From Pelomyxa schiedti (Eukaryota > Protista > Evosea): a stretch of 46,754 bases of DNA. The position numbers and the translations under genes are program-made. Within the stretch, counting starts at the first letter, position 1; every line of letters starts with the position of its first letter. Below, one piece after another: positions 13,080 through 35,928 of this stretch. The stretch spans positions 1 through 46,754 of the forward strand of contig JAHLWZ010000923.1 in the NCBI GenBank assembly GCA_020536535.1, given 5' to 3'. The notes under the pieces were generated by a model. That model was not told the origin of the DNA, made no database searches, and was given only the letters and a program-made list of their open reading frames with translations.

Positions 13080-16000
13080 ATGGCAACACTCTCAAAGTCG
13101 GATCTAGATCTAGGGGGTGGTGTGCGCCTTATAACAAAGGCGAGTGCGCAGAGTGTTGGTGGTCGCGGCAACGGTGTTGTCGGCAAAGTGCTGCCCAGTG
13201 TGGTGTCCATACATACTGACATTGTTGGCTTCCTGGCTCAGACGTGCGTCACTTTGGTATTTAGAAATACCTGTGCGTGCTCCTTTGCAACCCATCCCCT
13301 CTCCTTGTTCGTCTCACTGTGTCGGCACAGCGCCAAAAGAACTTACTGGAGAACTCGAGTTAAAACTGAAGTCTGATGCGACAGTTGTTGGGTACGCTGT
13401 AAACATGGGGGGTAAGTTTTTGGGACTTGTTCTCTGACTTGCTGAATCGTGTTCTCTATTCCAGAGACAATGGTGGAGGCTTCAATCGTCCCAAAAGATG
13501 TTGCCACAAAGGCTTTTTCTTCTGAGGTATTAGTGTGATGACCTCCAGTGGTCGAGTTTCACTATTCTTCCAAAGACTAGACACAAGAGTCAAGTAGCAA
13601 TTGCTGAACAATCAGTTGGAAATATTTTCCGATGCAAAGTTCACCCATTCAATCCATTATCTGAAAGAGTAATACAAGTATGGTCCATTGTCATTACCAC
13701 CGTTAACCCTGTGAAGGTGAGTATTTTTCACACCTTAGAGATGTATCCTTCAGAACTGGTGTATGAAACGCCATTTCAATTTTCTGCTGATACCGCCTTC
13801 AAGTTTATTGTATCCTTGCTGGTGATTTCCTTTTCCAATAAACACTCTAGGCTGAAGCTGAATTCCCTAGTGGCATTTGTGGTCCTCCCCATGTTAAAGT
13901 ATCTGCAAATCCTGCTTTCCAGATGCGTGCAGATCGTGTAACTGGTATCCACCATGAACAGCAATCAAATTTCTTATTCAACAAGACAATTTATCTCTTT
14001 ACTCGTGTGAATTCATGAGAGATTCACGTTGTGAGACTTCAGTGCTCAGAATCGATATTCCGCTCATCCACTGCAATAGTCCGCTTACATTGGTGGAACA
14101 AGATGATGACTCTACCTATTTTTGTGTTCAAGATTATTTCCCTGCTCCAGCAATTGTATCAACTCAAATACCTGTCTGGGAAACTCAGCATTTTAGAGTA
14201 ATGATAGAACCGCGAAAGTCGGAATTTTGTGGGATTGTTCACGTAGTCACTTGAACAGCAACATTGAGCAGTAAGAAAATCTAATAAGCGGAAAAACCCA
14301 TCAACTTTCCAACAGAGAGCTTCTGGTACTCTCTCATTTCTTTGGAACAGTTCAGACATCCTCCCTTGATTTAGTACTGTTTTCGACTTTAATAACGTCT
14401 AGTCACTTCCTGGTAAGCCCACTTAGAGTGCATGCAAGTTTTCAATGCCCAGACAGGATGCTTCCAAAATGCTTGAAACTCTCAAAGCCCATTCCGACTA
14501 CAATGGGGGTACGGATATCGTTTCATGTTTACAGCATGCTGTTGCAAATAATGAGATGTGTGACTTCTGGGTCTTCATCTCTGATGGGATATCCAGTTGG
14601 GGGGACCTTGAAGTTTTTTTTTTTATTTTGAAAATTAATCTTTACCTAGTTTAACAGGACTCCATTGGCTCGATGGACTTTTCATCATGCCCACCTATAA
14701 ACACCCTATGTTGCGCTTCAGTCGTTAATCACTCAGCATTGAGGGTATCCTGCATTCCACCATACCTCATTTAACATTACTCTAGAAAATAGCATATTCT
14801 ACAAAAGGAATTTACGTTCAAGAAAAAGATGCACATAAGGTTCTTTTTCGAGGGGGGGAAACCAGTCTCAGCTCTTTAAAGGCTGCACTTACATTAGTTG
14901 GGTGTAATACCTCAATTGTTGGAATAACAGACTGTGCTGGTCGTACCTCAAATAACTTTTTCGCATCTCAGATGTCACGTTCCCAGTTTTACACTGTGAG
15001 TGGATGTGTTCCCTTGCTCGCAGGGGGCAGTGGTACATTCATATCATCCATATGTAATAATATCAACCTAAAAACAGAAACTATATCTGTTTTTTTCCAG
15101 AATTCTGGGAAAACTTTTTCCTCTTCATACTCTGTTTCACGCAAAGCAGTATCATTGTGCCAAAGGAAACTAGGTATCTACAAACCTTTTTCTATCACAT
15201 GCATTTGACAGTTTGGAATCAGTTTCCAAATTTTGGGCTCTTTCAAAATTGGACAACATTTCTCTGACCAGTCAAACTGCGACAAGACAGAAGGAGTTCC
15301 TTTCATTGTGTAGAAAGTACCAAGTTCTCTCCTCCGTTACTTCTCTTGTTGTCCTAGAAACTATTGAACAAGTATCTTTTTCTACATGGCAATAATCCAA
15401 AAGAACACTTCTACAGTACCTTCGATATGGTATTGAACCTCCATCAAGTCAGCCCGAACTGCAAAGACAATACTTTTTATTAAAAAAAGACAAAGTTGTA
15501 TTGCTCAATCTCGTTCACTCTAACTCTTGAAAGGACTTGTCCCTTCAACGATACAATAAACGAGAACTGGTCTTAAACATGTGGAAACGCCGATTACTGT
15601 GGTTAAATGATAATTTCCTGTGTGATACAGTCGACCTTCATCACAAGGCTTTAAACTTTCTAAAACTATCTTGTGACGACACGGTCCTATTCTATGATGA
15701 CGAAATCTATTCCCGCCCACTAGTGACTCCTAATGGATACGAAGCTGATACAAGTGTACTGGCAACATATCCCTTGTCATCTTTTATCTTTTCCTCTGAA
15801 CCATCACTGGTACCAATTGTGGTGAGAAAGGAGGGAATTGGCATTTACCTGGAACTTTCAAAAGTACGTAAAAACTGCAGAGGTGGTGATCTTATCTTGC
15901 CTTATTCCAGATATTTGGGTCACATCTAGGGAATAGCGGAAAAAGGTAAACCATATCTCACAGAGCTCCATCGTAAATAGAACCCAGAGCCGAAATTCGT

Positions 16001-18924
16001 GGAGAGGGAAACATCCTTGATGAAAATAATCACCCCGCTCCTAATTACTTTGTGAACTCTCCCACAGGTAAGAGTCATATGAGATCTTACTTACAACTGC
16101 CTTACTCGTTAAAAGAGCTTTCGACTTTTTCTCAGGGCCGCGAAATACAACCTTTGATTGATGACTTCCTTCAGAGGGTGCAAAAGTTGGCAGAAGCTAG
16201 TGACTCCTTTTCTTCAAAAGTACTTCTTCTCTCGCATGATATTGCCACTGGACTGGGGAGTGGAACTGTGAGCACCTTGCTATCACGGTTATCTGAAGAA
16301 TATCCTTCATCATCCCGTGTGGCACTCACGCTCTTCCCTTCACTGAAAAGTTCTGTTGTCCAATCATACAATACAGTCCTTGCAATGCCATCACTGGTAT
16401 TCTGCCTCTTTTTTTTTTTTTTTTTTTTCGTTGTTTATATTCTGATTCATCTTTAGATTGAAAACTCTACACTTGACCTCTGTGTAGATCGTCAAGTACT
16501 GGGATTACTTGAAGTTTTTTTGTAACACATTCCAGGGCTTACAAAGGATAAAGTCATCCCCATTGGGTTGGGGATTCCCGTCTATGTACAATAATAGAGC
16601 GAACTTGCTGTACGACATCATGTTGCCCCATTTTTGTGAATACGAATCAAAAATGAGCTTGGAAAAAATTCAGTTCAATCTAGTTCCTTATCCAAGGTAC
16701 TTATTTCCTCAGTTTAGGGTCGCCTTTAAACCTCATACAGATTACATTTCATGATCCCGTCCATAGTGCCAGTAGTTGAAACACACACACCTCCCAGACT
16801 TTGGGAGGATATAAAGGATCTCTTTACAAATCCAGGGCGGAGTGCACTCTCTTCTGCTTCGTCAGGGACACATATATGTAGTACAATATTTTCTTCTTGC
16901 TCTCTTTTCTCCGCTATGGAGCTGAGTATGAAGCTTCCTTCGTTATATTCATCTGTATGTATCTTCTACTTTCTTTTCGATGTATTTCTCATTTCTTCTA
17001 CTTTGGCAGGCCACAGACTTTGCAGCATGGGCTCCAGCAAATGTAGTTTGCACTGTTCTCCCCCCTGTTCTTCCCTTGTCAGAGCATGTTACGCTATTGA
17101 CGAACTCAAGGGGTATACACAGCCATTGGTCTGGATTGACCGACCAATTTACCAAAGGGTTTCAGCACAAGATTCATATAGAAAGGCAAGCAATTGTTAA
17201 GGTGCTCGAACTTATTATTACCTTTAGATTTGTGGCCGAAGGCCTAGATGAAATGGAATTCACAGAAGCCGAAAGCAACCTAAACGATTTGTGCTCTGAA
17301 TATCAACAGTAAGACGAACATATTTGAATTACCAATAAAACCGGGATAGATACCAGGAATGTGTGGCAGACGATGAGGGTGACGAATGTGAAATTCCTGA
17401 ACTTCTCCCTGAAGAATCAGAAACAAATCTTATGTGCGAGGATGTAGATGGCTACACTGAAAGAGGGGGTATGGAAGAGAAGTCCATCCCTGAGGTTGAG
17501 GTTTTATCGGAGGAGGAGGGAACTGCTGCCATTGTAGTAGATACCACTGTTATTGACATTGAATCAAGGCCCTCACGAGAGCCGCCAATTTGTACCATTG
17601 TCAATCACCCGCCACTGCGACCATGTTTCACTCCAGATTGCTTGATTTATCCAAATTTTCGTCTAGAGCTTCATTGCACCACACCTTCTTTCGTCAATAC
17701 AAAGCTTGAGGACATCAATATCAGAGGTTAAGACTTTACTTACCTTTAGAGCTTATAATCTTCGTACCTAGGCCTTGATGATGTTTTTCGGAAGGAGTTA
17801 AATCGTGGAGAGGTGTGGCAGTTTGTTTACCTTTGCTGCTCGTGTGCAGTGTGCTTGTGGAAACAAGGATGCCATGGCCTAGCTATCAAGTCAATCTCTG
17901 TTCATACTCATGCAATCAGTTAAATAAACCACTAGGACCCTTAGTAATATTGCGGAGATTGCAGATGATAATGCCGACGTGCTCAGAACAATGGGATACT
18001 TGCTTCTCCAATTTTCCAAGGTGGAGGAAGCTGCACAAACTTTTGAAAGAATTTTGCACATACACCCAGATGAACCGAGATCGTATTTAGATCTTGCTCT
18101 CAGCCTTTTAAATGCTTCTGCGCCAGGTACCTGATGCCGAAAATACCGGTGTTAACTTCCATAAGCAAAAGGACTCAAGCGGGCATACGACCTATTCTCT
18201 TATATACTCGAGCAAGAGTGGGATGCGAGATTCAATCAGTTCGAAGTTGTAGCACTCATGGTATTTCCGTAGTAAGCCTCCTAAATATTAAATATTTTAT
18301 ATAGGATTTTGTCCGACTGAAATCTGCTGTCGATTCAACTAGGTTATTTCATTTTACATTCATTTGTTTACTTTTGTGTAGCTGTAGGGAGGGTTTCGAA
18401 TGTGATCACATATTTGAAGGCGATGTAAGCTGTAGTTTGCGAGTTGTATTGAACTGGTATTCTCCTCCATTCAAATTTTAATTTTGGTTGACATCTGAAA
18501 GGAACTGTGACATGACAGGTTGACAATGTTCCCTCCCACACAACACCAACAAGAAAAAGATGTTGAGCTACAAATCAGTGAGCCAAGTGGGGAGTGTTGT
18601 AGCACATTCCACAACAGCACAACCAGTGGTGGTATACTAAGCAAGAATATGGCATCTGGATATGGCCCCGTAGAATACATTACAAAGCACTGCCTCCCTG
18701 GCATATACATTGTTTCTGTACAGTTATATCACTCACCTTCCCCAGAACCCATGTATGTTTCTGTAGCTAGACCAGAGACAACCTCTAACTGTAACAGCGT
18801 TCCCGTGTGTTTACACATTTATACAAATTTTGGGCAGCCTTCTCAAACTTGTACTTGTACCACCTGCTTCCTAACAGAAGAAAAAGAGGTTGTTGCTCTA
18901 GCCACAATCGAATACTCTGAATAG
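13080..18924 (+). CDS. VIT-vWA-tubulin-like-TPR-DUF2135(YfaP) multidomain protein (many short introns)
   Basis: VIT: IVGFLAQTCVTLVFRNT..ELTGELELKLKSDATVVGYAV..MVEASIVPKDVATKAF..GNIFRCKVHP. vWA: KVGILWDCSRS..YNGGTDI..VFISDGISSWG. KFWALSKL..TSLVVLETIEQYLRYGIEPP. Tubulin ~15800-17390. TPR: TLSNIAEIADDNADVLRTMGYLL..ERILHIHPDEPRSYLDLAL..WDARF. DUF2135: LRVVLNWNCDMTDVELQISEPSGE..GGILSKNMASGYGPVEY..PGIYIVSVQLY..IYTNFGQP. Confidence 0.85.
15800..17390 (+). other. Divergent tubulin domain embedded in the VIT-vWA-DUF2135 gene
   Basis: DDFLQRVQKLAEASDSFSSKVLLLSHDIATGLGSGTVSTLLSRLSEEYP...FPSLKSSVVQSYNTVLAMPSLIENS...NLVPYPRLHF...FAAWAPANV...TLLTNS...[39 protein letters not shown] is colinear with tubulin from the GTPase domain to the acidic tail. 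Confidence 0.92.
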
Positions 18925-19022
18925 AGACAGTCTGACACAAAAAAAAATTCCTCTTACAAACCAAACAATCCATTTTTGGGCACATAATCACTGAGGGTTT
19001 GTTCAATGATGTGGTCATTTAT

Positions 19023-19712
19023 TTAGTGTTTCTCACGGATATTTTTGGTTTGGGTAAAGTGGAACTCGGTGCATGGGACCCAGGTGACAAGGGTGTACAT
19101 TTTTTCCTTGGCGTCTTCGTTCTCGTTTCTCCTCCTACAGAGTGGTGTTAGGTGTTTTGTTTTGCGAGGGTTATGTAGAGTGTCATGGTACGGTATTGTG
19201 GGTTAGGGTGTTTGGAGGGAAATGTGTGCTTGAGGCGGCGATGTTTGTCATTTTGAGGAAGAAGAAGAATACTTGGACAATCTGACGCGAACGCGGAAGG
19301 GCACGTTCTTAATGCCGGTGGACCAGACGAAGTGATTCAGCTTGGAATCCAGTCTAACGTCTTTTGTGTGCATTTCCTTCTTGGCAAATCGCCTGAGGAT
19401 CTTAATTGCCTTGGGGGCTCTGCGTTTGAACTGACTGCACAACAACGACAAAAGAAAAACGAGTTAGTTCGTGCAGAAAAAAAAAAGCGATACACATAAT
19501 AATAAAACAACCAAGCGTTGAAAACGTTAACTACGTGGCGTTGTTACGGCGACGCCGAAAAACGAATGAAGAGGTTTTGGTACAACAAAAAAAACAAGGT
19601 AGGGACAGAAAACGTACATGTTGTGGAGTTGTCTTCGCAGGTTGACGGTGTACTCGCGTGTGACGGGAGCGTTGCGATCTTTGGCGACCTTCTCCTTCTT
19701 CTCCCTCGGCAT
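19023..19712 (-). CDS. RPL31: 60S ribosomal protein L31 (eL31), 3 exons
   Basis: [87 protein letters not shown]. Confidence 0.96.
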
Positions 19713-21280: not shown

Positions 21281-24200
21281 TCAATTTTTTTCTGTTGTGA
21301 TGCTGGGGAGAGGGGCTGGCCGCGTTGGTTTTGGGAAAATGAGTGAGCATGATGACGGAGGCGATGATGACATTGGTGATTGATCCGACACAGCGGTTGT
21401 TGTGTTTGGATTAGCTTTTTCCCTGAGCTTGGATTCTTTGCAGGCCAAGTGATAGGTTTCGGAAAACCACGGCAGTGGTGAGACGACTTTTTTGGGTGGC
21501 CGGAATGCCGGCTTTGGTGGTTGTTTGTCCATTCCGTGAAGTGCTTTTTGTGCGGCCCATGTCAGTGTGGGTGGTGAGTTGCCTAGCTTCAGAGGACAAA
21601 AATGAAAACGAATGGAAGAATAGTGAGTTATTGTGAGCCACATGGGAGGAAGTTTACACTACCTGCAGTTGCAGCTGTCTGCGTTTCTGCGGGTGTTTGG
21701 TTAGGAGAAAGAATCGAAATAGGAATAATTGGAATGTACCATATATGCGGGTGACAGAGTCACTTTATCTTGGGGTACAAGGTTAGATTGCTGAATTACG
21801 GAATGTAAAACTTACTGGCGTCTAAGGATACTGGTATCAAGTTCTCACTTGGCATGTATCCTTTTATTATGTTTGTGGGATCACGTTCGGAGCAAACGAG
21901 CCACCAGGAGGAATTTGATGAATCCAAAACAGTGACGCGCTCTCCGCTTTGGAGATGCAAAAACCCAAAGGGGAGGTGTGATACATCATCTTCACTTGTT
22001 GTTATGTGATACTGAAAATATATATTGGCGTACCTTCTTGGTAGGAAGAATCATTAGCTACAATGGCGTGATTGAACACTTGTGAGAGTTCCTTGCTTTC
22101 AGTTTATATTACGACATAAATAACTGGATGCACAATGGGCACACCTAGAAAAAAATCGAGATAGTCTGTTTTTTTCAATGATAGAATTGTTTCGCCAACC
22201 ACAATCCCCAAGCCTTAGAAATTTCGGGTTGCGTTGAAAGTGTCTGTACTTGTCAGCAAAAAAAAGATTCTTCATTTGGGGTAAGGAAGGAATCTCACTC
22301 ACCCTTTCCACAGTTGGAAAAGACTCATGTTACTACTGGGGGTGATTGTTGTGAATTCACCTTGAATATACAGTGGATTGACATATTGTGCTTTAGAATA
22401 GTTTACTTCAGACCTTTTACAGTGAATAAAATGTGTGAGAGATCTAACCAATACCCACCACAAAGATATTGTTGAATTGGTGAGTCCAAGTGCTTCTCTT
22501 TGAAGGGCGCAATCTGCAAGAAATGTTCCATATCTTTTTATACATTTAAAGCGGTACATTCTTTAGGGAGCTTACCTGCAAGAGAAGAGCGCATCTACTA
22601 TCTTGAGAAGAAAGTTTTCGTTGAATTCAAAAGCGCAAGGATACTGTAGTGTCAACTGGTACACACAATCTGAAACAAAAAAAAAGTTGAGCCCACAGAA
22701 AATGAAAACAGGGAAGTGACCAATAAACTGGAGAAAAACGGGAGATCTTTCTGATGAGGACCTTTTTCTTGCATGCCCAACTCTACAAGAGATGAGACAA
22801 CTCTCGCTGATGTTGAGTGTTAATTTACCTCAGAGAAAATTTGTGCCCAAAAGATAGCCACTCCTTCTCAATCAGAACTTCAAACCCCAACAGAGTTCTG
22901 AAATAAGGATCGATTATCAATGTTGCCAGTGTGTTCAACTAATTTTGTTGTTACTTGAGGAAGTGGTGTGTAGTAAAATAACAATATAAAATTCTCTTGA
23001 AATATGGAGATCCCGATCTACCTGTGTAGATCTGTCAGACCCATCAAGGCATACTGTGAGAACAGACGTGCCTGCACATAGATAGTCGGCAATTCTAGAT
23101 GCCGAATTTAACACTGATTGTAGTTGTAATAACCATCTGTAATGCCTTAGCCGTATTTAGAATCTAGTAGCTTCACACTTCGGTATATCCGCGGGAGGTA
23201 AAGAAGGGATTTCTCCAATGTTTTGATAACTTTTATTGAGTTCCTGAAGGTCATCTTGGGATAAAGAGTAAGAAACAACTAATGCCATAAGGTCATTGTC
23301 AACCTAATAGTAGATTGCAGGAGAAAGTTTTATCATGTAGTCCCACAGGATCCAGTGCAGGTTGGACTCTTTTTTTTTATAGAGAAAGACTATCAGAATG
23401 GGAGGAAGAAAAAAAAAAAAGAAACTCAACTCAGGGCAGCAATCTACAAATGCCAGTCGTTTTGACAACTTCTCCAGCTGGCTCAGAAGATCAAAGTTGG
23501 CATTGAGGGTATTTCCAGAAAAGTCAATCTAGGTGTTATTAGCATTTAACAACGTAAGTGGCCATTTATTACCCTTGGTTTGGCAGATCTAAGAAGAAGA
23601 GCACGAGTTACTGGGTGCCTCCAGCTGAGAATTGGAAACCGACAAGAACTGTAGTATTTGGGAATTTGCCTAAGATGGAAATTAAGATGAGTAATAACAG
23701 GTTGTGTCTCACTTAAAGACGGAATCGTCAAGTGCTGCAGGAACTACTAATACTTGTGGATATGAAGGGCACAACAAAAAGTCATGGTTGAGGCTTGATA
23801 CTCTCCAATCTACTCAGCGAGTCAGTTTACGAAAAATGTACTTTCAATATGGACCAGAGTCAGGCAGCATCAATCTTGTGTACTCAGTGAGAGTGTTATA
23901 TACAGACCAGCCGGTATTTGGATAGTAAGACTGATACACAAAAGCAAAGGTTCTTGTTAACTTATTGGAGAATGATAGTCTATCGAGTATTAGTTCAAAC
24001 GCTTCCGCAGCATCTAGAATAAATGTGAGTAGTAATCTGGGCTGAAATGCTCACACCATCATTTGGTAGAAAACTAAGTGTAATTTTCCTTAGATCCTTA
24101 GAGAGAATCGTGCAAATTTTTTGTCCTTGGTCTGAGGACCATTTTGCCTTCTCAACACAAGCTAGAGGAATGGCCATCGAATTTGCCGATATGTCCGTCG

Positions 24201-26742
24201 AGAATGTGTCTCTTTTTACATTGTCATCACTCCATCTGTTTCTACAGTTTGTGATGATGCTATTTTTTGTATTGACAATATTGTCTGTAGGTTCAATGGT
24301 GTGACTGGGCACACTTTGGGTATTTTGGTATCCAAAAGTGTCCACCCCACCACAAACGTGGGATATAAAGTACATTCTGAAGTTGGTAATGATAATCAGA
24401 GAGGGCTTCTGCTTTGGAACCCCCAAAGGTTCTGAGTTTGTGTGGATTGGTGGATGTGTAGGAGACTTGGAAGAGAGTGACTGGTCAGTTGTGTTAACTC
24501 CCAATGTTGAATATTTTTGAACACCGCTTTTTTCAAATGGCTCACAAAGAGGAGGAGGTACAACAGGCTCAACGTTCAGAGGTGACTTTGTTCTTTTATC
24601 ATCATGGGAGTGTTCGTAAACCTCACCAGTGTGAAGAGAGTGGCCCCCTACGTGACTTCTTGAAGACTTGCCCTTGGATAGGGCACATAAAATGTCGTAG
24701 AGTTGCAGTGATGGTGACGCGTCTACACTTGAAGTATCTATATGTGGAGGCTCTATATTTGAAAGGTAGGGGGGTTCAACATAATGTGACCGGGAATGGG
24801 GTGAAGGAGACCTATCATATTTCCTAGAATGGTGAACTGAATCAGAGAGACAGTCGGGTGAAAAGGAGTGATGGCGTGAAGGGTGGTCTAGCTCAGGAGA
24901 TGCTGACGAGGGCTCATATCGCCCGGAGTGACCATGATGGGAGTGCGAATCACTATAATCAGAATGATGATGGTTAGGTGATTTAGAATGTCTTTCAGGT
25001 GACAAGGAAGTATCAGCTGACTCCTGTCTCTCTGATGAGTGGTGGTGCCTGCTGCGTGATTGGTGGTGCCGTTCAGGAGAATGATCATGGTGGGTTTTTC
25101 CTGTATCGTGACGCAACTCAGGTGAATGGCTGTGGTGGGTTTCTGGTGATTTGATGCAGCGTTCAGGTGAGTGGTGCCTGTGCCTCTCTGGAGAGTGGTG
25201 ACCATGTTTCTCTGAGGAGTGATGGCGCTCAAGGTAGTAGTGAGAGGGCTGCTCTGATGGGTGGTACTTGGTGTGAGAAAAGCCATCTATTGGAGGAAAA
25301 GACGCTGTGAGGCGTAGATCTAAGCAAGGTTGAGACGGGGATGGGCACCGTCTTATGGATACAGGAACAGGTGGATGAGCATGAAAATATTGAATTGGCT
25401 GAGGAGAGTAGGCTCTCTCCATGCGACTGGGAGAGTTTTCAGAAATGGTGAAAGGAGCTGAGGGGTGAAAAGCCACTGGTGCATATGGGAAAGGTAGGGG
25501 TAAGGGTCTTGGGGAGGAATGAGTTTTTAGGGCACTATGAGAGTACCCTGAGCTTCTTGTATTTTGCCCATAAGGGTAATATTTCAAAGGGGGAGCAGGG
25601 AGTGGGCGTCTAGAGGCAGAGGTTTGGGTATCAGGATCCCTCACTGGTTGCAGATGTGGACTGTATTTTGAGTGACTACTTCTGGTTTCTCTTGAGCTTT
25701 GTGGTGGGGTTGGAATGGAGTGAAGCTTTGGTGGGTTTGGAAGAGGTCGAGGGGATACAGTTTGGGGACCTGGTCTTCTGCTGAAAGAAGAAGATTTTCC
25801 AGTAGAGGAAATCCTCACCAAATTTGTGAGTAAAAGAGCTGATTGTGAGCTTCCTTGCGTTATGCGGTTATTGGTTGACAGTTCAGGGGAGGAAGAAACA
25901 CCACTTTCAAGAGAAACGGGCTCTGATTTTGCTAAATTTGGAGTGGATTCCAGCATTAATGCTGGGGACACAGAAGTGTCAGATGAAACAGGACTTGCAG
26001 TTGGAGTTGGCGAGGAAGGAGCGGATTTACTAGCCCGTATAATTGGAGGTGAAGGAAGTGGCCTGGGAGGCTTGGAAGCCACAACCCACGGCGCATTCCC
26101 TGCACCACATGATCCAATTTGTTCTTGGCCAGCTTCCACATCAGCCACATCATCCCCCTGCACTGTTCCTTGTTGTTGGTTCTGTACTTGTTGCAGTGAA
26201 TGTTTTTGCCTCTGTTCCTGCTGGCTCTGGTTTTGGTTTTGGTTTTGCATTTGCAATTGCATTTGAATTTGAATTTGTTGTTGACGTGGCGGTTCAAGGG
26301 GCACGCTGGGGGTTGGAGGCGGGGATTTCGACGGGATGGCAGCAATTACCTGCTCACCCCGCAGAATCTCGAGGTCGCAGTCTACGCCGTAAAACACGAA
26401 TCTCTGAGTGAGCTTCATTCGCCCACCGGCACAAAATGTCGCCGTCACAGGCACAGGCATCGGCATAGTGACGGGCACGACGGCCGCAGTAGCAGTGGTG
26501 CCTCCTGCCGCTGTGCCTGACGGCGATGATGGGATTGATGACACGGAGAATGGGGATGGGACTGGGGGTTGATGACGGGGTTTGGAGGGAACTACCACTC
26601 CAAGGATGTTTGGGTGCGATGTTTCTGGCTGTGGTGATTGGTGTTGTTCGGGGGTGTTTGTGGTGCTGCTGTTGTTGCATTCGGTGGGGAGTGCTGGGGG
26701 TGTTGTGGCTCTGGCGATGTGCTCGGCGAGCTTGGAAAACAT
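21281..26742 (-). CDS. Myotubularin-related phosphoinositide phosphatase with long low-complexity N-terminal insertion
   Basis: [121 protein letters not shown]. Confidence 0.9.
24850..25240 (-). repeat. Coding His-rich degenerate tandem repeat (HHSPER-like units) in myotubularin
   Basis: [41 protein letters not shown]...[23 protein letters not shown]...[10 protein letters not shown]. Confidence 0.75.
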
Positions 26743-27061
26743 TATTGTGGGAAGACAGTATGCTGAAAACGAAATAAACGGAGACGACGATTGGGGGAGG
26801 CAGGGAAGCGGTGTCAAAAAAACGCGGCGTCGTCGTTGTTTTTTGGGTTTAAAAAAAGGCAGTTTTTGAGAGCTCACGGAAAAGAACGGGGTTCGGCACC
26901 AAAAAGGAATGTGGCTACTCCAAATACCAGGGAGACGAAACTGTTTTGTTATTGAGGTTTTTCCTTGTCCAACAGGCACAAGGAGAATGGATGATCACTT
27001 TGTGACATTCAAAAGGTGCGAAATGTATGGTTGTTTCTTTTTGTCCCAAAGAGCGGTTCAT

Positions 27062-28444
27062 TCATTGAAGTCTATTGCCACAGTTGGAGCAGAACCTTCC
27101 GGCAGCAGGTGAAAAACAAGAATTGCAGCAATTGACCAGCTTACTACCACAGTTGCTGCAAAAGCGGCCATTCACAGCCTGCTGACATGTAGGACACCCA
27201 AGAACTGTGCCTACAGAAGATGAAGAAGCTGATGTTGATAATGGTGTGGAAGGAGGTGATGTGTTTACTGTTGTTGATGTTGTCGCTGGTGTTGATGGAG
27301 TTGGTGTGGGTGTGTGGCGTTCTGGCGAGGCCGGCTCCGTTGGGGTGGAACTTGTTCCGGAATGTGATGTTGATGGAGTTGGGGATGGTGATGTTTCCCT
27401 CTCTTTGGGTGGTGCCTTGACGGGAGAAATGTAGTAATCCACACCTTCGGGTTCGCCTTCTGTCATTGATAGCCTTTGCATCTTCAGGTAGTTATTGTAC
27501 ATATCTCCGGCCATACCGCCGGTATTGGCAAGCCCACTTGATAAACCGTGAGGCTTCAGACGGGATTCTGGGGGAGGATCAATGGGAACTCCAACAAGAG
27601 AATGTGCCATTTCCCGAATTCTTGACAAGCGAGTGGCACAATATAGCTTTTCAGCCTCGGTGAACTTCAAGTGAAGCCAACCAGTGAAATCAAAGCAGGA
27701 TATGTAGGTGACGTTGGAAGATGGTGGTGCGGAATCGGGTATTGAAGACACCTGCACTCCACAAAACATCATAATGCCACGGCAGAAGGTCTTGTTTATA
27801 GGAATATTGGGAGCCTCAAAGGATGCTCCCCAGCACTCAAACGAATCTGCCCCATTTGTATAATTGTGTGCTCTAAGAAAGGAGACATCACGTTTTGGGC
27901 ATGTAGCCGACAGTGTCTTGTGCTGCATATACAACTATTTGGGTGTTGGAAATAATTTGGGAAAAAAAAATCCCATGTACCAATTGTGGGTTTCCATCTT
28001 CAACAACTTGAATAGAAGCTACAGTTGTCCTATTCCACTGGAAGCACGTTAAAAATTCCGTGTGAAGTAAAGTTCAACAACACATATAAACACCTCACAC
28101 TCAACTCAAAACTTCCTTCGGCAGTCAGTACAAGCCACACCACCTATCTTATAAAGCAAAGACAGAAGTAATAGAAACAAAAATACCTTCGCTTCACTGT
28201 TCCAGTAAACATCAAAGACCATTTTTGGTGGGGCCTTTATCACGCCCCTTGCTCTCGTGCAATAAACCTCGTATTTCCCCCCAGGAGAGCAATGCACTCG
28301 AGAGGACAGACGATCGACTCCCGGCTCATCCGTTGGTATTTCCGACCACCCGTCTTCGGACGAGCACCACTCGTCTACTAGCGCCTTGCACTGTTGCAAT
28401 GACGTGGACGCCTGCTCGCTGCGCGCAACTGCAGCCCCCTTCAT
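27062..28444 (-). CDS. START-domain lipid-binding protein with C-terminal double zinc ribbon
   Basis: DGWSEI..RARGVIKAPPKMVFDVYW..WN..IVYMQHK..PKRDVSFLR..NVTYISCFDFTGWL (START); C-terminal CPTC...FCSNCGSKL..CCNSC...FCSNCGNRL (DZR). ATG at 28444. Confidence 0.8.
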
Positions 28445-28824
28445 TTCGTTTTTGGTTGTTTTGTTGGTGTCTGGGCTCGGCGTTGTAATTCGTTGCCTGT
28501 TGGTGTGGAGCTTTGTTTTTTGGTGTTGAAAATCCAAGAGGCAAATTTCGTGCCCCTTGATTTCAGAAATGTTCTTCTTGGTATGTTGTTCGTCTTTCAT
28601 TCTGGATTCATCATGCCATACTGGTTACACCACCTTAGCCCGACAGCCTGGCCAACCAATGCTTCCACCACAGCAATACTAACAACAAGGGAAACCAACA
28701 TCACCAAACTAAATCACAATGAATTCAAGGTTGTTCGAAAAAAGAACTTCATTTTTTGTGTAGAAACAGTGCTGGTGGAGTTGTTCCGAGGAGGGTGAGT
28801 ACGAGTCACTTGAGGCTTTAGGCT

Positions 28825-31800
28825 TCAACTGGAAGGAGAACTTGGGTTAGAGTCCGCACCACTGGGAGGAGAAGCGGCGGCGGATGTTGATGTGGTGTTT
28901 GTTTTGAACTCATTTTGTGCGGAACTGAGGTTTGACGGTGGTGGGGGTGGTGCACACCCAACTGGTGAGTTTGGTGCGAGGGTGGAAGACGCGGTTTTTG
29001 GGGTTGGCCTTCTGCCACTGCGCGATTTTGATGACTGCGGTGGTAAAGCATGTCCGCGTGTTGTGGTTGTAGTTGTTGTTGAGGTGGTGTGTTTTGGAGG
29101 TGTGGTGGCAAGCTGCCGGCCGTGATTGTTGCCGGGTGCGTGGCCGCGATTCCTGATGTTGGGGGACTCATCACTTGCAGGACTGAGGCTCCCAGAGCTC
29201 TCACTCCCGGAAAAGTTGTAGTCATCTTCTGCAGCTGCGGGACCCTGGTTGTCACTTCCAGACTGACTGTCACTCCCATAAACATCAACTTTGGGGTGTC
29301 TTCTCCTTGCGCTTGTCCTCACAGCTCCATGTTCGTGCCAAGTAATAGAACTTCCCGCCATTGACGCCGCTGTGCTAGCAGCAGTCGCAGAAGCAGACGC
29401 ACTATGCCGTTTACGGCGAGAGTTGGGAGCAGTTTGTAGGTCTTTATTCTTCCTGATACAATCAAGTAAGAATTTGATGTGTTCATGAAGTGTATCGTCA
29501 CTTGGCCAAGAGGCTGCGGCGCTTTTGTTGGGTGTTGAAGAGAGCTTCTTGGCACCAATACGAACTTTTATTGTACTGGACGACTTGGAACTTGAGGTTG
29601 TGCTCCACTTAGTAGCATCTGGGGAATTCGCATCATCTCCATATTGTTGAATGTCTTTGGTGAAGCACAGCTCGTAATCAGCACAAATGGCTGGGTAACA
29701 CCCCCATCCATGCTTGAATGTCCCCAATAATAAATCTCGGTCGCGTGTAACATCCCACCATGGAGTAAGTCTACGTCCAAAGTCCAACACGGTGTAATTA
29801 TTAGGAGTTGATGCTGTGGAAATCTCGTTGTTTAGTTGTTCAAGGAGCCTCATTCGGTCTGCTATTTCACTTAACTTCGTAGAAATTTCATCCTGTCCAA
29901 TAGAAGAAATGGGACTGTCTTCATCAGGTCTTTTCCTTCGCGACTTGGTGCGTGAGAATCGGTCTGACGTCTTGAGGGCGTTGAGGCGATCTAATACTGT
30001 CTTGAAGATTTGCTTGTCACTTGGAAGGGCAATAAGAATGCACTGCTGTAAAAATGTGCATACGATGTCCGACAACTCGTGATGGGCGTGGTGCGAAAAC
30101 CCAACTGACCTGCTCTGAATAAGTTTCCAGCATGGTCGGCAGTACAGTAAAAAAGCTTCAAACAGTGCTCGTGGCTGATTCGAACTAAGCCAGTCCAAGG
30201 AGAGAATATCGCAAGTGGGCTTCTTACTCACGGTGGGGGGAAGTGTGGGATTTGCAGAACGTTTGGATTTAGTGTTTGATCGTAGTGCTTGTGGTGGGGG
30301 AGATGATGACATTGGGTGTTTTTTTGACTTTTTCTTGTTTCTTGGGTCGGAATCATCATCCGATAGATGCTGTGATTGTTGTGCACTATCAACCTTATAG
30401 ACTTTTCTCTTCCTTCGCGAAAAATCAATATCACTTAGCCACTCCAGAATCTTAGCTTGCTCTTCAACAAAAAGAGTTGTTGTATGGCTTGCACAGAACA
30501 ACAGTAAGTTCCGTAAATTGTCTCTATCTGGGGGTATCCTGCCCTTGGCTTCATTGTATCCTGTGATCATTGCTTCCACAAGTCCTTGTAAGCTGTGCAA
30601 AAAGCCTTCTTTTTTCGATTCCAGCCACACTCGTTGCTCACTTTCACTTTTGCCAGCAACAAGGTTAGTAATTTGATCCAGCAAGGATTTTGCTGTTGCT
30701 GCTTGGGGGAGCACCTTTTCCCAAAAGTGTGGGTCTTTCACATCAAGACTTGCAGTCTGCTCATCCAAATGAAAAGTGGCTTTGCTAAACATACTTCCTT
30801 GGTTGTCTTCCTTCCATACAACACGTGAACTGCGCTTGACAAGGATGTTTTCTATGTCATCTTCACAAAAACTGGCACTGGCTTGATCGGCTTCCCCCTC
30901 ACGGAATAGGTCATACGCACCATACCGAAGCATGTCATTTATCTCCTCCTTTGACAGACCTGAAGAAGTTGCGGCGGACTGTTTGGCAGTGCCAGTGCCA
31001 GTACTACTCACTGTTGCGTGATTGTTGTTATTTGAGCCAATAGAGTGCAGAACCACTTGATCTAGTCCCAGTTTCTTAGAGGCACGGTCGAACATTATCA
31101 TTTCGTATGTATTGCGAGAGAGGAGTCTGTAGACTTTAACATCTTTCTGTTGTCCAATCCGGTGGCACCGAGCTTGTGCTGTGATATTATAAAAATTAGA
31201 TGAGAAAGGATTTTCCCCACCCCCTTTTTCCCTCAACCTTGCACATCATTTTGAGGATTCCAGTCACTATCATAGATAACAACTGTATTTTTTTTTTTTG
31301 TGGGTTATTAAATAGTGTGGGTTTGCACGTTCTCTAACCTGTATCAGCGGCTGCCAAGTTAATCCCAAACCCCCCTGCTCGCGTGCTAAGTAAGAACACA
31401 AATCTTCGGTATTCTGGATTGCAAAATCTCTCGATAGACATCTGCCTGTCATTTGCTTTGACACCACCATCCAGCCGCTCATACAGATAGTTGTTGAACT
31501 GCAAATACTTCTCCAGAAGGTCCAGAACTCCCTTTAACTGGGAAAATATGAGGATCTTGTGGTGGGCAGCAAACAGCTTGGGAAGGAGTTTGTCGAGAAG
31601 CACTAGTTTGCCTGAACTACGGGTGAGAACAGTGTTGTAGTCCTCTGCCGTTTTAGTGAAGCCAGCTTCTTTCTCTTCCACACCGGGAATGAGGAACGGG
31701 TGATTGCACACCTTTCTCAACTGCATCACTATGTTGAGTAGATTGGGCACATTCGCGTTGTTGGCACATCCTTTGTTAAGAAACTCGCGGTTCTTCTCCA

Positions 31801-34800
31801 ATATGGCGCGGTAGTACTGTTTCTGTAAAACAGTCAATTCTACTTCCACCACAGTTTCTTCCTTGGGAGGAATTGACTTCTCCACGTCGCCCTTCATACG
31901 GCGCAGCAGATGGGGATGCAAAACATCCTGCAATTTTTTGACCTGCCCTTCGTCCTGTAAATTTTCGAACTGATCAAGAAAGTCATCTTGGCTGGCGAAA
32001 TGAACTGGCTCAATGAAATTCAGCAATGACCACAACTCCTTTGTATTGTTCTGTATGGGGGTACCTGAAAGTGGTTTTTTTGTTTTATTGTAAGTCACTT
32101 TGGTATCTGAAACGAGCGAACAAACCAGTCAAGAGGATTCGGTGGTATCCTTTTATCGTTTTCAAAGTTGTGATAAGTTTTGACTGAGAATTTTTCATCC
32201 GATGAGCTTCATCAACGACAATTACTTGCCACTGAATACGGGCCAAATCGTTCGCGTCAGTCATTACCATCTCGTATGTTGTTACGAGAACAGTAAACTT
32301 TATCTGCTTGCTCAATGGTCGGCCACTTTGATCCAGATAAAACCATTCATACTTCTTGATGTACTCACGGTTGTCTTTGTTCCCAATGTAGACGACCACA
32401 TTCATATCAGTCCATTCTTGCAACTCCTTGACCCAGTGTGCGATTGTGGTAAGAGGTGCAACAACAAGGAAAGGTCCAGGGAGTAGTTGCACGACTCGGA
32501 GATGCTCAAAAAAAGCTACAACTTGCACAGTTTTACCAAGTCCCATCTTTTAAAAAAGTTACAAGAAAAAAAGTGGTAGACAACTGTAATACCTCATCAG
32601 CCAATATGGAGCCCCTGCCCTGGCACCAGCAGAAAATGAGCCAATTTAAACCCTCCAATTGGTAAGGCCGAAGCATGTTACTTCCTTTGTATTCTGGTGT
32701 CTGTTCCATTTTGACCCATAGGCGAGAGGGAAGGGGTGCCGGAGGTGGCTCCCTTGGAAGAATGTGAAACCGGCGATAATCCTCTATCTTTTTATCATCC
32801 TTGAAGTCTTCAGCAAACTCCCATGTGGACTCTGTGTAAGATAACCCCACCCATTTCACCAAGTACATTGGCTTCTTTCCCTCTTCAAGATCCACCTCCC
32901 CAGATGCAATAATCCTATCAACTTGAATATATTCAGGAGGAAAGAATTCCTCAGCACACGGGTCTTCACTGGCGCCGGCAGCAGGATGTTGTTCATTTCC
33001 GCGCTTTGTCCAGTACCGTTTGATCTTGGCAGCACCTTGTTTTCCTTCTTGTTGTAGTAGTTGAGGTTCCGTGATCCACTCACAATGCACATAGGATTTA
33101 TCTCTCCATTTCACTAAGTACTTGACAACTGGTTGAGTGGGTGCTGGGGTTACAGTAACAACGTTTGGTGTTATGGCTGCTGCACTATTGACAGGAATAC
33201 TACCAGAAGTCGCTGATGTCTCTGACTTTGTTTCATGGTTCTCTGCTGTTGTGGGCCTTTTTTCGTCAGGGGGTTCAGGCTGTTCAGATTTCACTTTTGA
33301 ATCCCGTTCTTGGGGTGGCTCATTTGCTGGTTCTGCGACAGTAGTAGTAAGGGGAAGCTTCTCTGTTCCCCCCGACACCTCCTCTTCTTTCGTCACTACA
33401 TTAATCTCTCCCGTCGTTGTTTCTACTTTAACATCCCCTGTCGTTTTCTCTTCGGTAGTTTTCGTTGTCGCAACAATAGGCACTTCATTCTTCATCACTG
33501 AGTCTGAAACAGTTGTTGCTTTGGAAACTACTTCCTTTGCCTTGTTTTCCTTGGCAGGTACAACTTCTTTAGCCTTGGCTTCAGTTTTGTACTCTACAAC
33601 GTGAGCAATAATCTTTTCAATGACGTCTCTGTCTTCATCTTTTTTCTGTAAGATTCGTTAAATTCACCAGGGTAAAAACTCACCCACTTCGGGAGCTGTA
33701 AAGGCAGGGAAATCAAGTGCCGCTTCTACAGCAGGTGGGGTTGCTTCCTTTGTCTCGTTGAGGAGGGGAGATGTCGGTGCCGGTGAGGAAGACGGAGCAA
33801 TTGAGGAATAGGTTGGACTGTGAGGTGCTACTGATGACGTTGTTGTTGTCAGACCCGTGGCATTAATCATGTCTGGGAGGGATGTGGGATTACTGCTGGT
33901 AACCCCATTTTCTGGGGTGGAAACAGGAGCTTCGACAGTAGTGGAAGCGGCTTTCTTTCCTCTGCCTTTCTTGGGGATAACAGATGCTGCTGCACCTTCT
34001 TCAGCATCCTTGTATGCAACACGCCGCCTTTTTCGAAGGGAATATGTTGTTTTATCTTCATCTTCATCGTCATCTTCATCGAACTCAGCCAAATCCATTG
34101 CTTCTTTTGCTTTCAGGGATTGACGGCGTGTGCGCATGGGTCGGTTGTTAACCGCCATTTGTACCTGTGGTCCCTGTAGTACTTTTTGTGGTGTATTTTG
34201 CACATTAACTTGTTGAGTAAGGTGCTGCTGAAGTTGTTGCTGAAATGCCATGGGTTGTTGACTCCCCGCTGAAGGTGGACCTATGGGAAGGTCACGCTTT
34301 ATCTGTCCAAGCAAATCCACTGGAGAGCCAACAGAACCTGCTTTTTGAGAAGATTCGCCCTGTTTTGAAAAACAAATTAACTCAATATCCAAGACGGTTA
34401 GGAGTTTAACCTTGGCCAGTAATTGTTGAAGCGAACTGAGTTGGGAGTGTAAGAACTGCTGCTGTTGTATGAGGATGGTAGTCTCTTGTTGCTGTTGTGA
34501 ACTGGGGTGGGCTGACTGTAACTGTTGCAAACTTTGTTGGATTTGTTGTATTTTAGCAGTGCATAATTTCATATGTATCTGTTGTTGTGTAGATTGTGGT
34601 AGGGACTGAAAGAGTTTTTGAAGATTAGCCAACTGTGCCTGGTTAGATTGTGGGCTCGTGGAGGATACTATTTGTTGTAGTGCTGTCTGAGCCTGTGAAG
34701 TGTTGGATGTTGTTGATTGTGGTGAAGGAGGAGTGTTTTGTGGTGGTATTTTCTGCTGGGGAAGTTGACCCTGGAACGCCTGCTGATTTGGCAGTGAACT

Positions 34801-35928
34801 GCCCTGCGGAAGTTGTGTCTGGGTTTGTGGTAATGTTTGAGTTTGGGGCTGTTGCATGAGTTGAGCTTGTTGTTGCACTTGTTGTGCTTGTTGCAGTTGA
34901 GCTTGGAGTTGTAACTGAAAAGACTGGAACGAATTTGGTTGCTGTGGTTGAACTGCTGGTGGAGTTTGGAGAGGGGGGAGTTGACCCTGGCGCGACTGCA
35001 AGAGTTGTTGTTGCTGGGCGTGCCTTTGAGCTGTTAATTGTTGAAATTGCTGTAGTTGCTGTTGCTGTAGTAAAAGCAATTGTTGTTGACTTTGAGCCAG
35101 GCTTTGTGGAGTTTGTATCCCTTGTTGATGCTCTTGAGCAACGGGCTGTGGCTTCGGAACTTGTTGCGGTAATATAATACCCACAGGCAGTGATTGCTGA
35201 GGTCCAACTTGTTTCAATGCTTGAAGGAATGCCTGATGAAACTTTAAAATGATTTTAAGTGACTACTTTCACTTACCTCTGGTGTCTTTTGATCCTGAGT
35301 GATCCCGACTCGTGTCATGTTCCGTTGTACTTTTTCAGAGTTAGGCATCCATTGGTTTTTTTGGTGATATAATTATATATAATCTATCACTTAAAAAAGG
35401 GGGAAAAAAGAAAAAAAAGAAAAACAAAATAAACTCACGTAGTGCCTCGCCTTGAGCAAGTTCTGCTTTGGGCATTGGCGTAGGAATCACGCCATTGGGC
35501 AGTTGAACGTGGATTTTCAAGTTATCACCACTCCCAACACCAGTACCGCCAGATGCACTCATCGAGATCCCAGAGCTGTTGCCATTGAGGCCGTTGTTGT
35601 TGTTGTTGCCGCTGACTCCGCCGTTGAGATTGACATTTACACTGACGTTTACGTTTACGTTGGCGTTGCCTACGGCACCACTGACGCGACTCGGATCTAC
35701 CGGTGCAGTGTCAACAACCACACTTGTCGTAGTCGTAGTAATTTGCTGTTGTTGTGCCATCGGCTGTAGTACCGCTACCCCATTTAATTGTTGTTGTTGT
35801 TGCTGTTGCTGTTGCTGTTGCGTTATCGGCTGCGACGAAGGAAGACGCGACTGGGAATGGGACGGAGATTGAGATTGTGGGTGGGGATTGATTGCCGTAG
35901 TAGATGCGGCCGAGGCAGTGGGTTCCAT
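28825..35928 (-). CDS. Chromodomain-helicase-DNA-binding protein, CHD6-9/Kismet-like subfamily
   Basis: Two chromodomains (KYLVKWRDKSYVHCEW; YLVKWVGLSYTESTWE); SNF2 motifs ILADEMGLGKT, DEAHRMKN, GTPIQNN, LSTRAGGFGINLAAADT, QARCHRIGQ; CHD6-9-type WWDVTRDRDLLLGTFKHGW..CF and WPS..TL; Q-rich N-terminus. Confidence 0.92.

What the first reader, a model, noticed from the sequence alone, without database searches (positions are those of the whole stretch)
13080..18924. Tubulin domain fused inside a VIT-vWA-TPR-DUF2135 protein
Seen: hand-splicing gives one reading frame from the post-vWA region (TSLVVLETIEQ|YLRYGIEPP...LNMWKRRLLW) into a tubulin-like N-terminus (LVPIVVRKEGIGIYLELSK|IF), with no stop or separate start. 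The frame runs through the tubulin fold to [36 protein letters not shown] (41-nt intron 17309-17349). It continues without a stop through an acidic linker into TPR (LAIK|TLSNIAE..HPDEPRSYLDLAL) and DUF2135 (GYGPVEY). Established: tubulins are almost always stand-alone proteins, and VIT-vWA-TPR-DUF2135/YfaP is mainly a bacterial architecture with a variable middle segment. Inference: a eukaryotic tubulin was captured into that variable slot. It could act as a microtubule-docking or capping module, or as bait for tubulin-targeting enzymes or pathogen effectors. I know of no description of this architecture.
Basis: partly seen in the sequence, partly recalled or inferred. Interest (0 to 1): 0.95.

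Follow-up and report, generated by a model that had tools for sequence, protein, structure and literature searches.

The report
Degenerate beta-tubulin inside amoeba bait scaffold
An anaerobic amoeba has one gene in which a worn-down copy of beta-tubulin, keeping mainly the outer helix that motors and other proteins grip, sits in the floppy loop of a large bacterial-type scaffold protein; sister genes carry actin, Rab, SNARE, ubiquitin or splicing-factor pieces in the same loop, which suggests an undescribed family of built-in baits.

Summary
The fusion is very probably real. In Pelomyxa schiedti, 13080-18924 splices (32 exons, 13 introns seen in RNA) into one stop-free 1483-aa frame; the NCBI model (KAH3744382.1, misnamed 'Tubulin beta chain') is identical over the insert. 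Both halves of a VIT-vWA-TPR-DUF2135 scaffold flank it. RNA supports the 5' junction but does not cover the 3' junction. Correction: the insert is not a whole tubulin. Only beta residues ~105-430 match (~30%); the first ~100 residues and the GTP signature are gone, polymer contacts are eroded, but helix H12 is 20/23 identical at saturated synonymous sites, with kinesin/dynein-contact residues kept. Docking or capping is therefore unlikely. The scaffold core has the ITIH fold with an intact MIDAS, and the slot lies where ITIH4 has its protease bait. At least 24 paralogs share the scaffold; 14 carry Pfam-supported host domains in that slot. Best reading: a bait that displays the beta-tubulin outer surface; function untested. 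No paper and no second tubulin fusion found. This scan already noted the family on other contigs; the tubulin cargo analysis is new here.

The parts
13080..18924 (+). Whole gene, 32 exons, 1483 aa in my model; NCBI KAH3744382.1 1467 aa; no signal peptide seen by eye
13203..13677 (+). VIT domain (Pfam PF08487, 57 bits, P0003 42-146)
14230..14588 (+). vWA domain MIDAS elements: D291-x-S293-x-S295 (14230-14247), the GGTD threonine (14505-14516), D378 (14577-14588)
15339..15602 (+). End of ITIH-like core and long helix ending in the family W-x-x-R-x-x-W motif; last scaffold residues before the slot
   Evidence: RNA joint 15371/15417
15603..16126 (+). Slot, first part (P0003 616-744): expressed and spliced, no detectable similarity to tubulin or anything else; may be an unrecognisably decayed tubulin N-terminus
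16127..17249 (+). Degenerate beta-tubulin body, H3 to H11' (beta ~105-404), 27% identical to beta consensus; T4 loop reads ATGLGSG (16244-16264); R262 kept; M-loop, H9, H10 eroded
17186..17227 (+). 42-nt GC-AG intron (removal restores collinearity with beta-tubulin; same choice in the NCBI model)
17250..17359 (+). Beta-tubulin helix H12, 20/23 identical, E410, D417, E421 kept; split by intron 17309-17349
17309..17349 (+). 41-nt intron at the 3' junction; if retained gives an immediate in-frame TAA and holds an AATAAA (as do 2 other introns of 31); not covered by RNA
17360..17726 (+). Acidic tubulin-tail-like stretch running into an acidic linker (28% D/E) and the start of the C-terminal scaffold half, one 125-codon open exon
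17772..18260 (+). TPR-like helical region of the scaffold
   Evidence: RNA 18029-18447
18407..18921 (+). DUF2135/YfaP-like C-terminal domain (GYGPVEY at 18658-18678)
   Evidence: RNA

Best explanation
One cytosolic protein. Shown: its two scaffold halves belong to a bacterial-type VIT-vWA-TPR-DUF2135 family whose core has the ITIH fold with an intact MIDAS, and whose middle is a disordered loop; here the loop holds an old, captured beta-tubulin that has lost its GTP site and most polymer contacts while selection has kept helix H12 and neighbouring outer-surface residues. Inferred: the insert is a bait. It displays the surface that microtubule binders recognise (H12, R262, acidic tail). A protein that targets this surface, most plausibly an effector or protease of an ingested or endosymbiotic microbe or virus, engages or cuts the bait and is then held by the Mg2+-dependent vWA site, as in ITIH4, with the TPR-DUF2135 half passing on or completing the capture. 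The ~25 paralogs do the same for actin, Rabs, SNAREs, ESCRT-III, ubiquitin/E2, Hsp70/DnaJ, spliceosome parts and the Pol II tail.
For: Single frame and RNA. Slot has no counterpart in bacterial homologs and is the only long low-confidence part (591-687) of a bacterial homolog's model, pTM 0.76. Best fold match ITIH1, Z 25.8 over 488 residues; best sequence-profile match ITIH4, profile 23-531 to ITIH4 18-593; the ITIH4 bait is residues 633-713, just after that core, and trapping needs the MIDAS (PMC7793589). H12 20/23 against 82/303 elsewhere, p=1.5e-8; only 6-7 of 18-19 same-residue codons match the genome's beta genes, so it is protein-level selection, not a fresh copy; the genome's free-standing divergent tubulins keep T4 and H11' best instead. 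R262, E410, D417, E421 matter for kinesin and dynein (PMC4735607, PMC4298687). 14 paralogs with host domains above Pfam cut-off in the same slot.
Against: No binding partner, localisation or activity is known. ITIH4 is secreted and its bait is unstructured; a trap function has not been shown for any DUF2135 protein. H12 also binds the cell's own motors and MAPs, so conservation does not point to a foreign attacker. No related genome was available for dN/dS; the few RNA differences near the insert are 3 non-synonymous and 1 synonymous at depth 3-5, too few to read. The insert's fold could not be predicted (pLDDT 36). Metagenome relatives have only low-complexity slots.
Confidence: 0.45

Rival explanations
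1. Host adaptor or sponge: the kept H12 and acidic tail bind the amoeba's own kinesins, dynein, MAPs or tubulin-modifying enzymes, so the scaffold is transported, or titrates those proteins. Each paralog would plug the same scaffold into a different cellular machine.
For: The kept residues are those that host motors need; the genome has many kinesin genes. Relatives in other eukaryotes carry a WH2 plus acidic motif (P0151) or a SNARE-like helix (P0153), which are docking motifs for host machines (both below Pfam cut-off). A cytosolic VIT-vWA protein of Dictyostelium partners an F-box ligase (PMC10539598), and an ITIH-fold chain sits in the trypanosome doublet-microtubule structure (9e5c_4s).
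Against: Motors bind across the alpha-beta interface (PMC4298687), and a lone beta H12 would bind weakly. It does not explain why cargoes are decayed copies of the machines' own subunits, nor the lineage-specific expansion.
Confidence: 0.3
2. Microtubule docking or capping: the insert pairs with alpha-tubulin or a microtubule end and anchors the scaffold.
For: About 330 residues from H3 to the tail remain collinear with beta-tubulin; the T7-H8-S7 stretch and S9 keep 5/18, 5/11 and 7/17 identities, part of the face that contacts alpha in the dimer (own knowledge).
Against: No T1-T3 loops, altered T4, H11' 3/12, M-loop 1/16, H10 1/16; both ends are tethered inside a 1.5-kaa protein.
Confidence: 0.08
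3. Neutral passenger: a permissive loop accepts stray retrocopies of abundant mRNAs, which then decay without function.
For: Cargoes are highly expressed housekeeping genes; none of the 6 introns of the canonical beta genes is shared, fitting retroposition; most of the insert is decayed.
Against: H12 is held at the protein level against saturated synonymous sites; the frame stayed open through about nine later intron gains; actin-bearing paralogs likewise keep terminal motifs.
Confidence: 0.1
4. Not one protein: a tubulin-like gene lies between, or terminates, a split scaffold gene, or the assembly is chimeric.
For: No RNA across 16785-18028 or 15434-15569; intron 17309-17349 has an in-frame stop and AATAAA; whole-genome-amplified DNA can be chimeric; a template-switch end lies at 18418.
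Against: Scaffold halves flank the insert in order; the beta sequence continues exactly across the intron; RNA joins the scaffold motif exon to the tubulin exons; two DNA runs agree; intron-poor paralogs carry core, slot and DUF2135 in single ORFs of 1025 and 1249 aa; another RNA contig reads through 18418.
Confidence: 0.07

Closest known systems
ITIH4 (inter-alpha-trypsin inhibitor heavy chain 4), bait-and-trap protease inhibitor (PMC7793589)
   Same: VIT-hybrid-vWA core, intact MIDAS, variable exposed region right after the core
   Different: ITIH4 is secreted, its bait is an 80-residue proline-rich stretch, and it has no TPR-DUF2135; here the protein looks cytosolic and the bait position holds a captured host protein. 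Inhibition is untested.
Bacterial VIT-vWA-TPR-DUF2135 (YfaP-like) proteins, e.g. Pedobacter DUF2135 proteins
   Same: Full scaffold, 22-30% identity over both halves, same variable slot
   Different: Bacterial members are ~1000 aa with an N-terminal signal-like helix and a ~100-residue disordered slot (one has a carboxypeptidase-regulatory domain there); no function described.
Beta-tubulin
   Same: Collinear from H3 to the acidic tail, best hits all beta, H12 nearly intact, K254-type T7/H8
   Different: No N-terminal ~100 residues, T4 signature altered, ~30% identity, embedded in another protein; the genome keeps separate alpha, beta, gamma, delta and epsilon genes.
Plant NLRs with integrated decoy domains (own knowledge)
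   Same: A conserved, expanded scaffold family whose members carry different, often degenerate copies of host proteins
   Different: No NB-ARC or LRR; no effector binding or immune output shown.
Known long tubulin-containing proteins (MC1R-TUBB3 read-through chimeras, tandem or mis-joined gene models)
   Same: Tubulin in a longer chain
   Different: Those have intact tubulin at a chain end; none of the best 120 has VIT or DUF2135.

Membership tests
beta-tubulin | Sequence closest to beta-tubulins over the fold | tested here: met
   Best 60 PDB matches all beta, E 1e-43, beta 98-441; own beta loci score best
beta-tubulin | N-terminal GTPase part with T1-T3 loops (residues 1-104) | tested here: not met
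   No similarity by HMM, hhalign, shuffled alignment, Pfam or ESM features
beta-tubulin | GGGTGSG (T4) nucleotide signature | tested here: not met
   ATGLGSG at P0003 784-790
beta-tubulin | H12 and acidic tail | tested here: met
   20/23 identical, acidic stretch follows
beta-tubulin | Tubulin fold | tested here: inconclusive
   AlphaFold with a 12-row alignment gave pLDDT 36
beta-tubulin | Dimer with alpha-tubulin, polymerisation | not testable with these tools
   Contact elements eroded
VIT-vWA-TPR-DUF2135 proteins | VIT domain | tested here: met
   PF08487 57 bits
VIT-vWA-TPR-DUF2135 proteins | vWA with MIDAS DxSxS...T...D | tested here: met
   By alignment with family members; Pfam vWA itself is weak
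VIT-vWA-TPR-DUF2135 proteins | C-terminal TPR and DUF2135 | tested here: met
   41 family members at E 1e-15 to 1e-31, ESM score 0.96; PF09906 alone is under cut-off
ITIH4-type bait inhibitors | ITIH core fold | tested here: met
   For a bacterial homolog's model: ITIH1 Z 25.8; profile hits ITIH4, PARP4, ITIH1. P0003 itself was not folded whole.
ITIH4-type bait inhibitors | Variable exposed region directly after the core | tested here: met
ITIH4-type bait inhibitors | Secreted | tested here: not met
   No hydrophobic signal at the N-terminus by eye; no predictor run
ITIH4-type bait inhibitors | Cleavage-triggered, MIDAS-dependent complex with the enzyme | not testable with these tools
   needs biochemistry
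NLR with integrated decoy | NB-ARC/LRR receptor scaffold | tested here: not met
   No such Pfam hit
NLR with integrated decoy | Paralogs carry different host-protein copies at one site | tested here: met
NLR with integrated decoy | Integrated domain binds a pathogen effector and triggers defence | not testable with these tools
   none

The most novel reading that the evidence does not exclude
A protist innate-defence family: a bacterially derived ITIH-like trap, expanded to about 25 cytosolic copies, each loaded with a decoy of a core eukaryotic machine; this gene is the anti-tubulin-effector member and a rare natural case of tubulin used as an internal, non-polymerising domain.
Probability: 0.35. 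Interest if true: 0.95.

Novelty: new variant of a known kind. Interest (0 to 1): 0.8.

Why it matters
Tubulin is almost never found as an internal domain. Here selection has stripped one to its outer helix, which marks the surface that matters to an unknown partner. With sister genes carrying actin, Rab, SNARE, ESCRT, ubiquitin and spliceosome pieces in the same loop, the family gives a ready list of baits for finding what attacks or regulates these machines in a free-living amoeba, extends the integrated-decoy idea beyond plant NLRs, and offers a first testable function for the uncharacterised bacterial DUF2135 scaffold. The NCBI name 'Tubulin beta chain' hides all this.

Tried and rejected
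AlphaFold of the insert failed for lack of alignment depth. Search for a second VIT-tubulin fusion: none among the best 120 of 231 long tubulin-bearing proteins, in viral contigs, in 18 metagenome loci or elsewhere in this genome; these searches are not exhaustive and no other Archamoebae genome was reachable. An attempt to pull annotated paralogs with a fragment alignment returned none. Recent gene conversion of H12 rejected. Alternative genetic code not needed. IQ-TREE timed out; FastTree on HMM-matched columns was used, one distant bacterial row left out. Papers: DUF2135 0 hits (37), YfaP plus macroglobulin 0 (67), decoy terms 0 (68), nothing relevant; the genome paper does not mention tubulin or von Willebrand. 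My spliced model was kept in the script folder and never sent to a search; searches used single exons by reference and, once a search returned it, the database's own protein P0003. The joined-model search step was left out.
Full report
Source and gene model. The genome (52.4 Mb, 5337 contigs) is Pelomyxa schiedti: a search with one exon returned the window's own protein P0003, listed as KAH3744382.1 'Tubulin beta chain [Pelomyxa schiedti]'. Hand splicing of 13080-18924 gives 32 exons, 31 introns of 39-60 nt and 1483 codons without a stop. The public model differs only by three in-frame intron choices before residue 501. One intron is GC-AG, a class making 1.59% of introns in this species (PMC8887013). 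Neighbours are ordinary eukaryotic genes (by eye). My joined model was not sent to any search; exons were searched by reference and P0003 was used once a tool had returned it.

Is it one transcript? DNA run X1 holds the gene in one contig and X2 in three pieces, from one sample. RNA contigs of low depth show 13 introns. They cover 15224-15371 joined to 15417, then 15570-15739, overlapping a spliced contig 15720-16496, then 16560-16784, and 18029-18888. So the exon that carries the last scaffold motif (15579-15602) is spliced into the tubulin exons. Nothing covers 15434-15569, 16785-18028 or the 5' part. The 3' junction rests on three things: the beta-tubulin sequence continues exactly across intron 17309-17349, the next exon is open for 125 codons (chance ~6e-4), and the parts on either side are two halves of one conserved protein. 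Retaining that intron would stop the chain right after H12, and it holds an AATAAA, but so do two other introns. I put the fusion at about 0.9.

Scaffold. Residues 36-625 and 1200-1467 of P0003 align with bacterial VIT-vWA-TPR-DUF2135 proteins; 650-800 and most of the rest of the slot have no counterpart. The MIDAS is complete. A model of a bacterial homolog (pLDDT 78, pTM 0.76) is confident except for a loop at 591-687, the slot. Its best structural match is ITIH1 (Z 25.8, 488 residues) and the family profile's best PDB sequence is ITIH4 (E 7e-12). In ITIH4 the protease-susceptible bait (633-713) follows this core, and trapping needs the MIDAS (PMC7793589). The slot is thus positionally the ITIH4 bait region. 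This is a resemblance, not membership: the amoebal protein looks cytosolic and no activity is tested.

Insert. P0003 745-1075 matches beta-tubulin ~105-441 at 31-33%. T4 reads ATGLGSG; H11' is 3/12, M-loop 1/16, H9 2/14, H10 1/16, H7 3/20, while H3, H4 and H5 keep 21/54 and H12 keeps 20/23 (H12 against 82/303, p=1.5e-8; the H3-H5 contrast is post hoc, p=4e-4). Free-standing tubulins of this genome show the opposite pattern, with T4 and H11' best kept, and its divergent beta has H12 at 15/23 against 52% elsewhere. H12 codons differ from the canonical beta genes at most synonymous sites and none of their six introns is shared, so the capture is old, perhaps by retroposition, and H12 is held by selection on the protein. 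R262, E410, D417 and E421, which matter for kinesin and dynein (PMC4735607, PMC4298687), are all kept. The genome retains separate alpha, beta, gamma, delta and epsilon genes, so this copy is surplus. The fold of the insert could not be predicted.

Family. At least 24 other loci in this genome have the same scaffold with slots of 0.5-3.8 kb. Above Pfam cut-off, slots hold actin (2), Ras/Rab (2, one with synaptobrevin), Snf7 plus PH, ubiquitin and/or E2 (2), DnaJ, Hsp70, SKIP plus SF1-type KH, Prp6 N-terminus, Slu7, G-patch and Pol II CTD repeats; weaker are an actin stub and an ESCRT-III. I did not build spliced models for the intron-rich paralogs, but two intron-poor ones carry core end, slot and DUF2135 in single ORFs of 1025 and 1249 aa. 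In a FastTree of scaffold columns, 23 paralogs, this gene and two other eukaryotic sequences form one group (0.92) apart from the bacterial rows; this gene sits on a long branch with the Snf7, SNARE and actin carriers (0.94). The two outside sequences have a WH2-acidic motif and a SNARE-like helix in the slot, both under cut-off; metagenome relatives have long low-complexity slots and no tubulin. The direction of transfer was not tested. I reached the family picture; earlier notes of this scan, read afterwards, describe the same family from other contigs and are not independent support.

Mechanism. Shown: an ITIH-like core with intact metal site, an exposed loop, and in it a non-GTP-binding tubulin remnant whose outer helix is under selection. 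Inferred: the remnant is there to be bound. The best reading (0.45) is a bait for a foreign tubulin-targeting enzyme, trapped through the MIDAS; the main rival (0.3) is an adaptor or sponge for the host's own motors, MAPs or tubulin-modifying enzymes. These two share the claim that H12 is a displayed binding surface (about 0.75 together). Docking or capping (0.08), neutral decay (0.1) and a split gene or artefact (0.07) fit less well.

Novelty. No paper in the searchable library mentions DUF2135 or this architecture, and no other protein joins VIT and tubulin among those checked. The parts and the concepts (ITIH4 bait, integrated decoys) are known; the combination is not. I class it as a new variant of a known kind, with a real chance that the family is a new defence system. 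Interest 0.8.

Noticed in passing
G000 loci L024-L048 (e.g. C919, C266, C644, C1277, C267, C954, C922, C596, C843, C757): Paralogs with actin, Rab, VAMP, ESCRT-III, Hsp70, DnaJ, ubiquitin/E2, spliceosome motifs or Pol II CTD in the same slot
   Followed up: partly
L039, L042, L047: The actin C-terminal motif ending HRKCF is kept and reads on in frame; L047 keeps only this stub
   Followed up: partly
PDB 9e5c chain 4s: An 809-residue chain of the T. brucei flagellar doublet 96-nm repeat has the same ITIH-like fold (E 1e-15): a VIT-vWA-type protein on microtubules; not identified further
   Followed up: no
L051 (P0151), L052, L053, P0153: Intronless or transcript-derived eukaryotic relatives with very long low-complexity slots; WH2 plus acidic-Trp motif in P0151, syntaxin-like helix in P0153
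   Followed up: partly
L061, L063, L065 (Ga0154020): Intron-bearing relatives from an unknown eukaryote in a metagenome; slot of L065 is partial, no known domain seen by eye
   Followed up: partly
L003 (C2279), L006 (C413), L008 (C989), L018 (C810): Several further divergent free-standing tubulins in this genome (beta-like, two alpha-like, one very divergent)
   Followed up: partly
L036 (C292): One paralog with a Gln/Met/Pro-rich slot and bacterial-type GYGPEEY falls outside the main eukaryotic group; perhaps a separate acquisition
   Followed up: no
window 19000-19620, minus strand: Ribosomal protein L31-like gene converging on the 3' end of this gene (by eye)
   Followed up: no
window 23998-35262, minus strand: CHD-type chromatin remodeller with long low-complexity arms (by eye)
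   Followed up: no
window 18418: RNA contig end carries a template-switch oligo; another contig reads through, so probably a truncated cDNA rather than a start
   Followed up: partly
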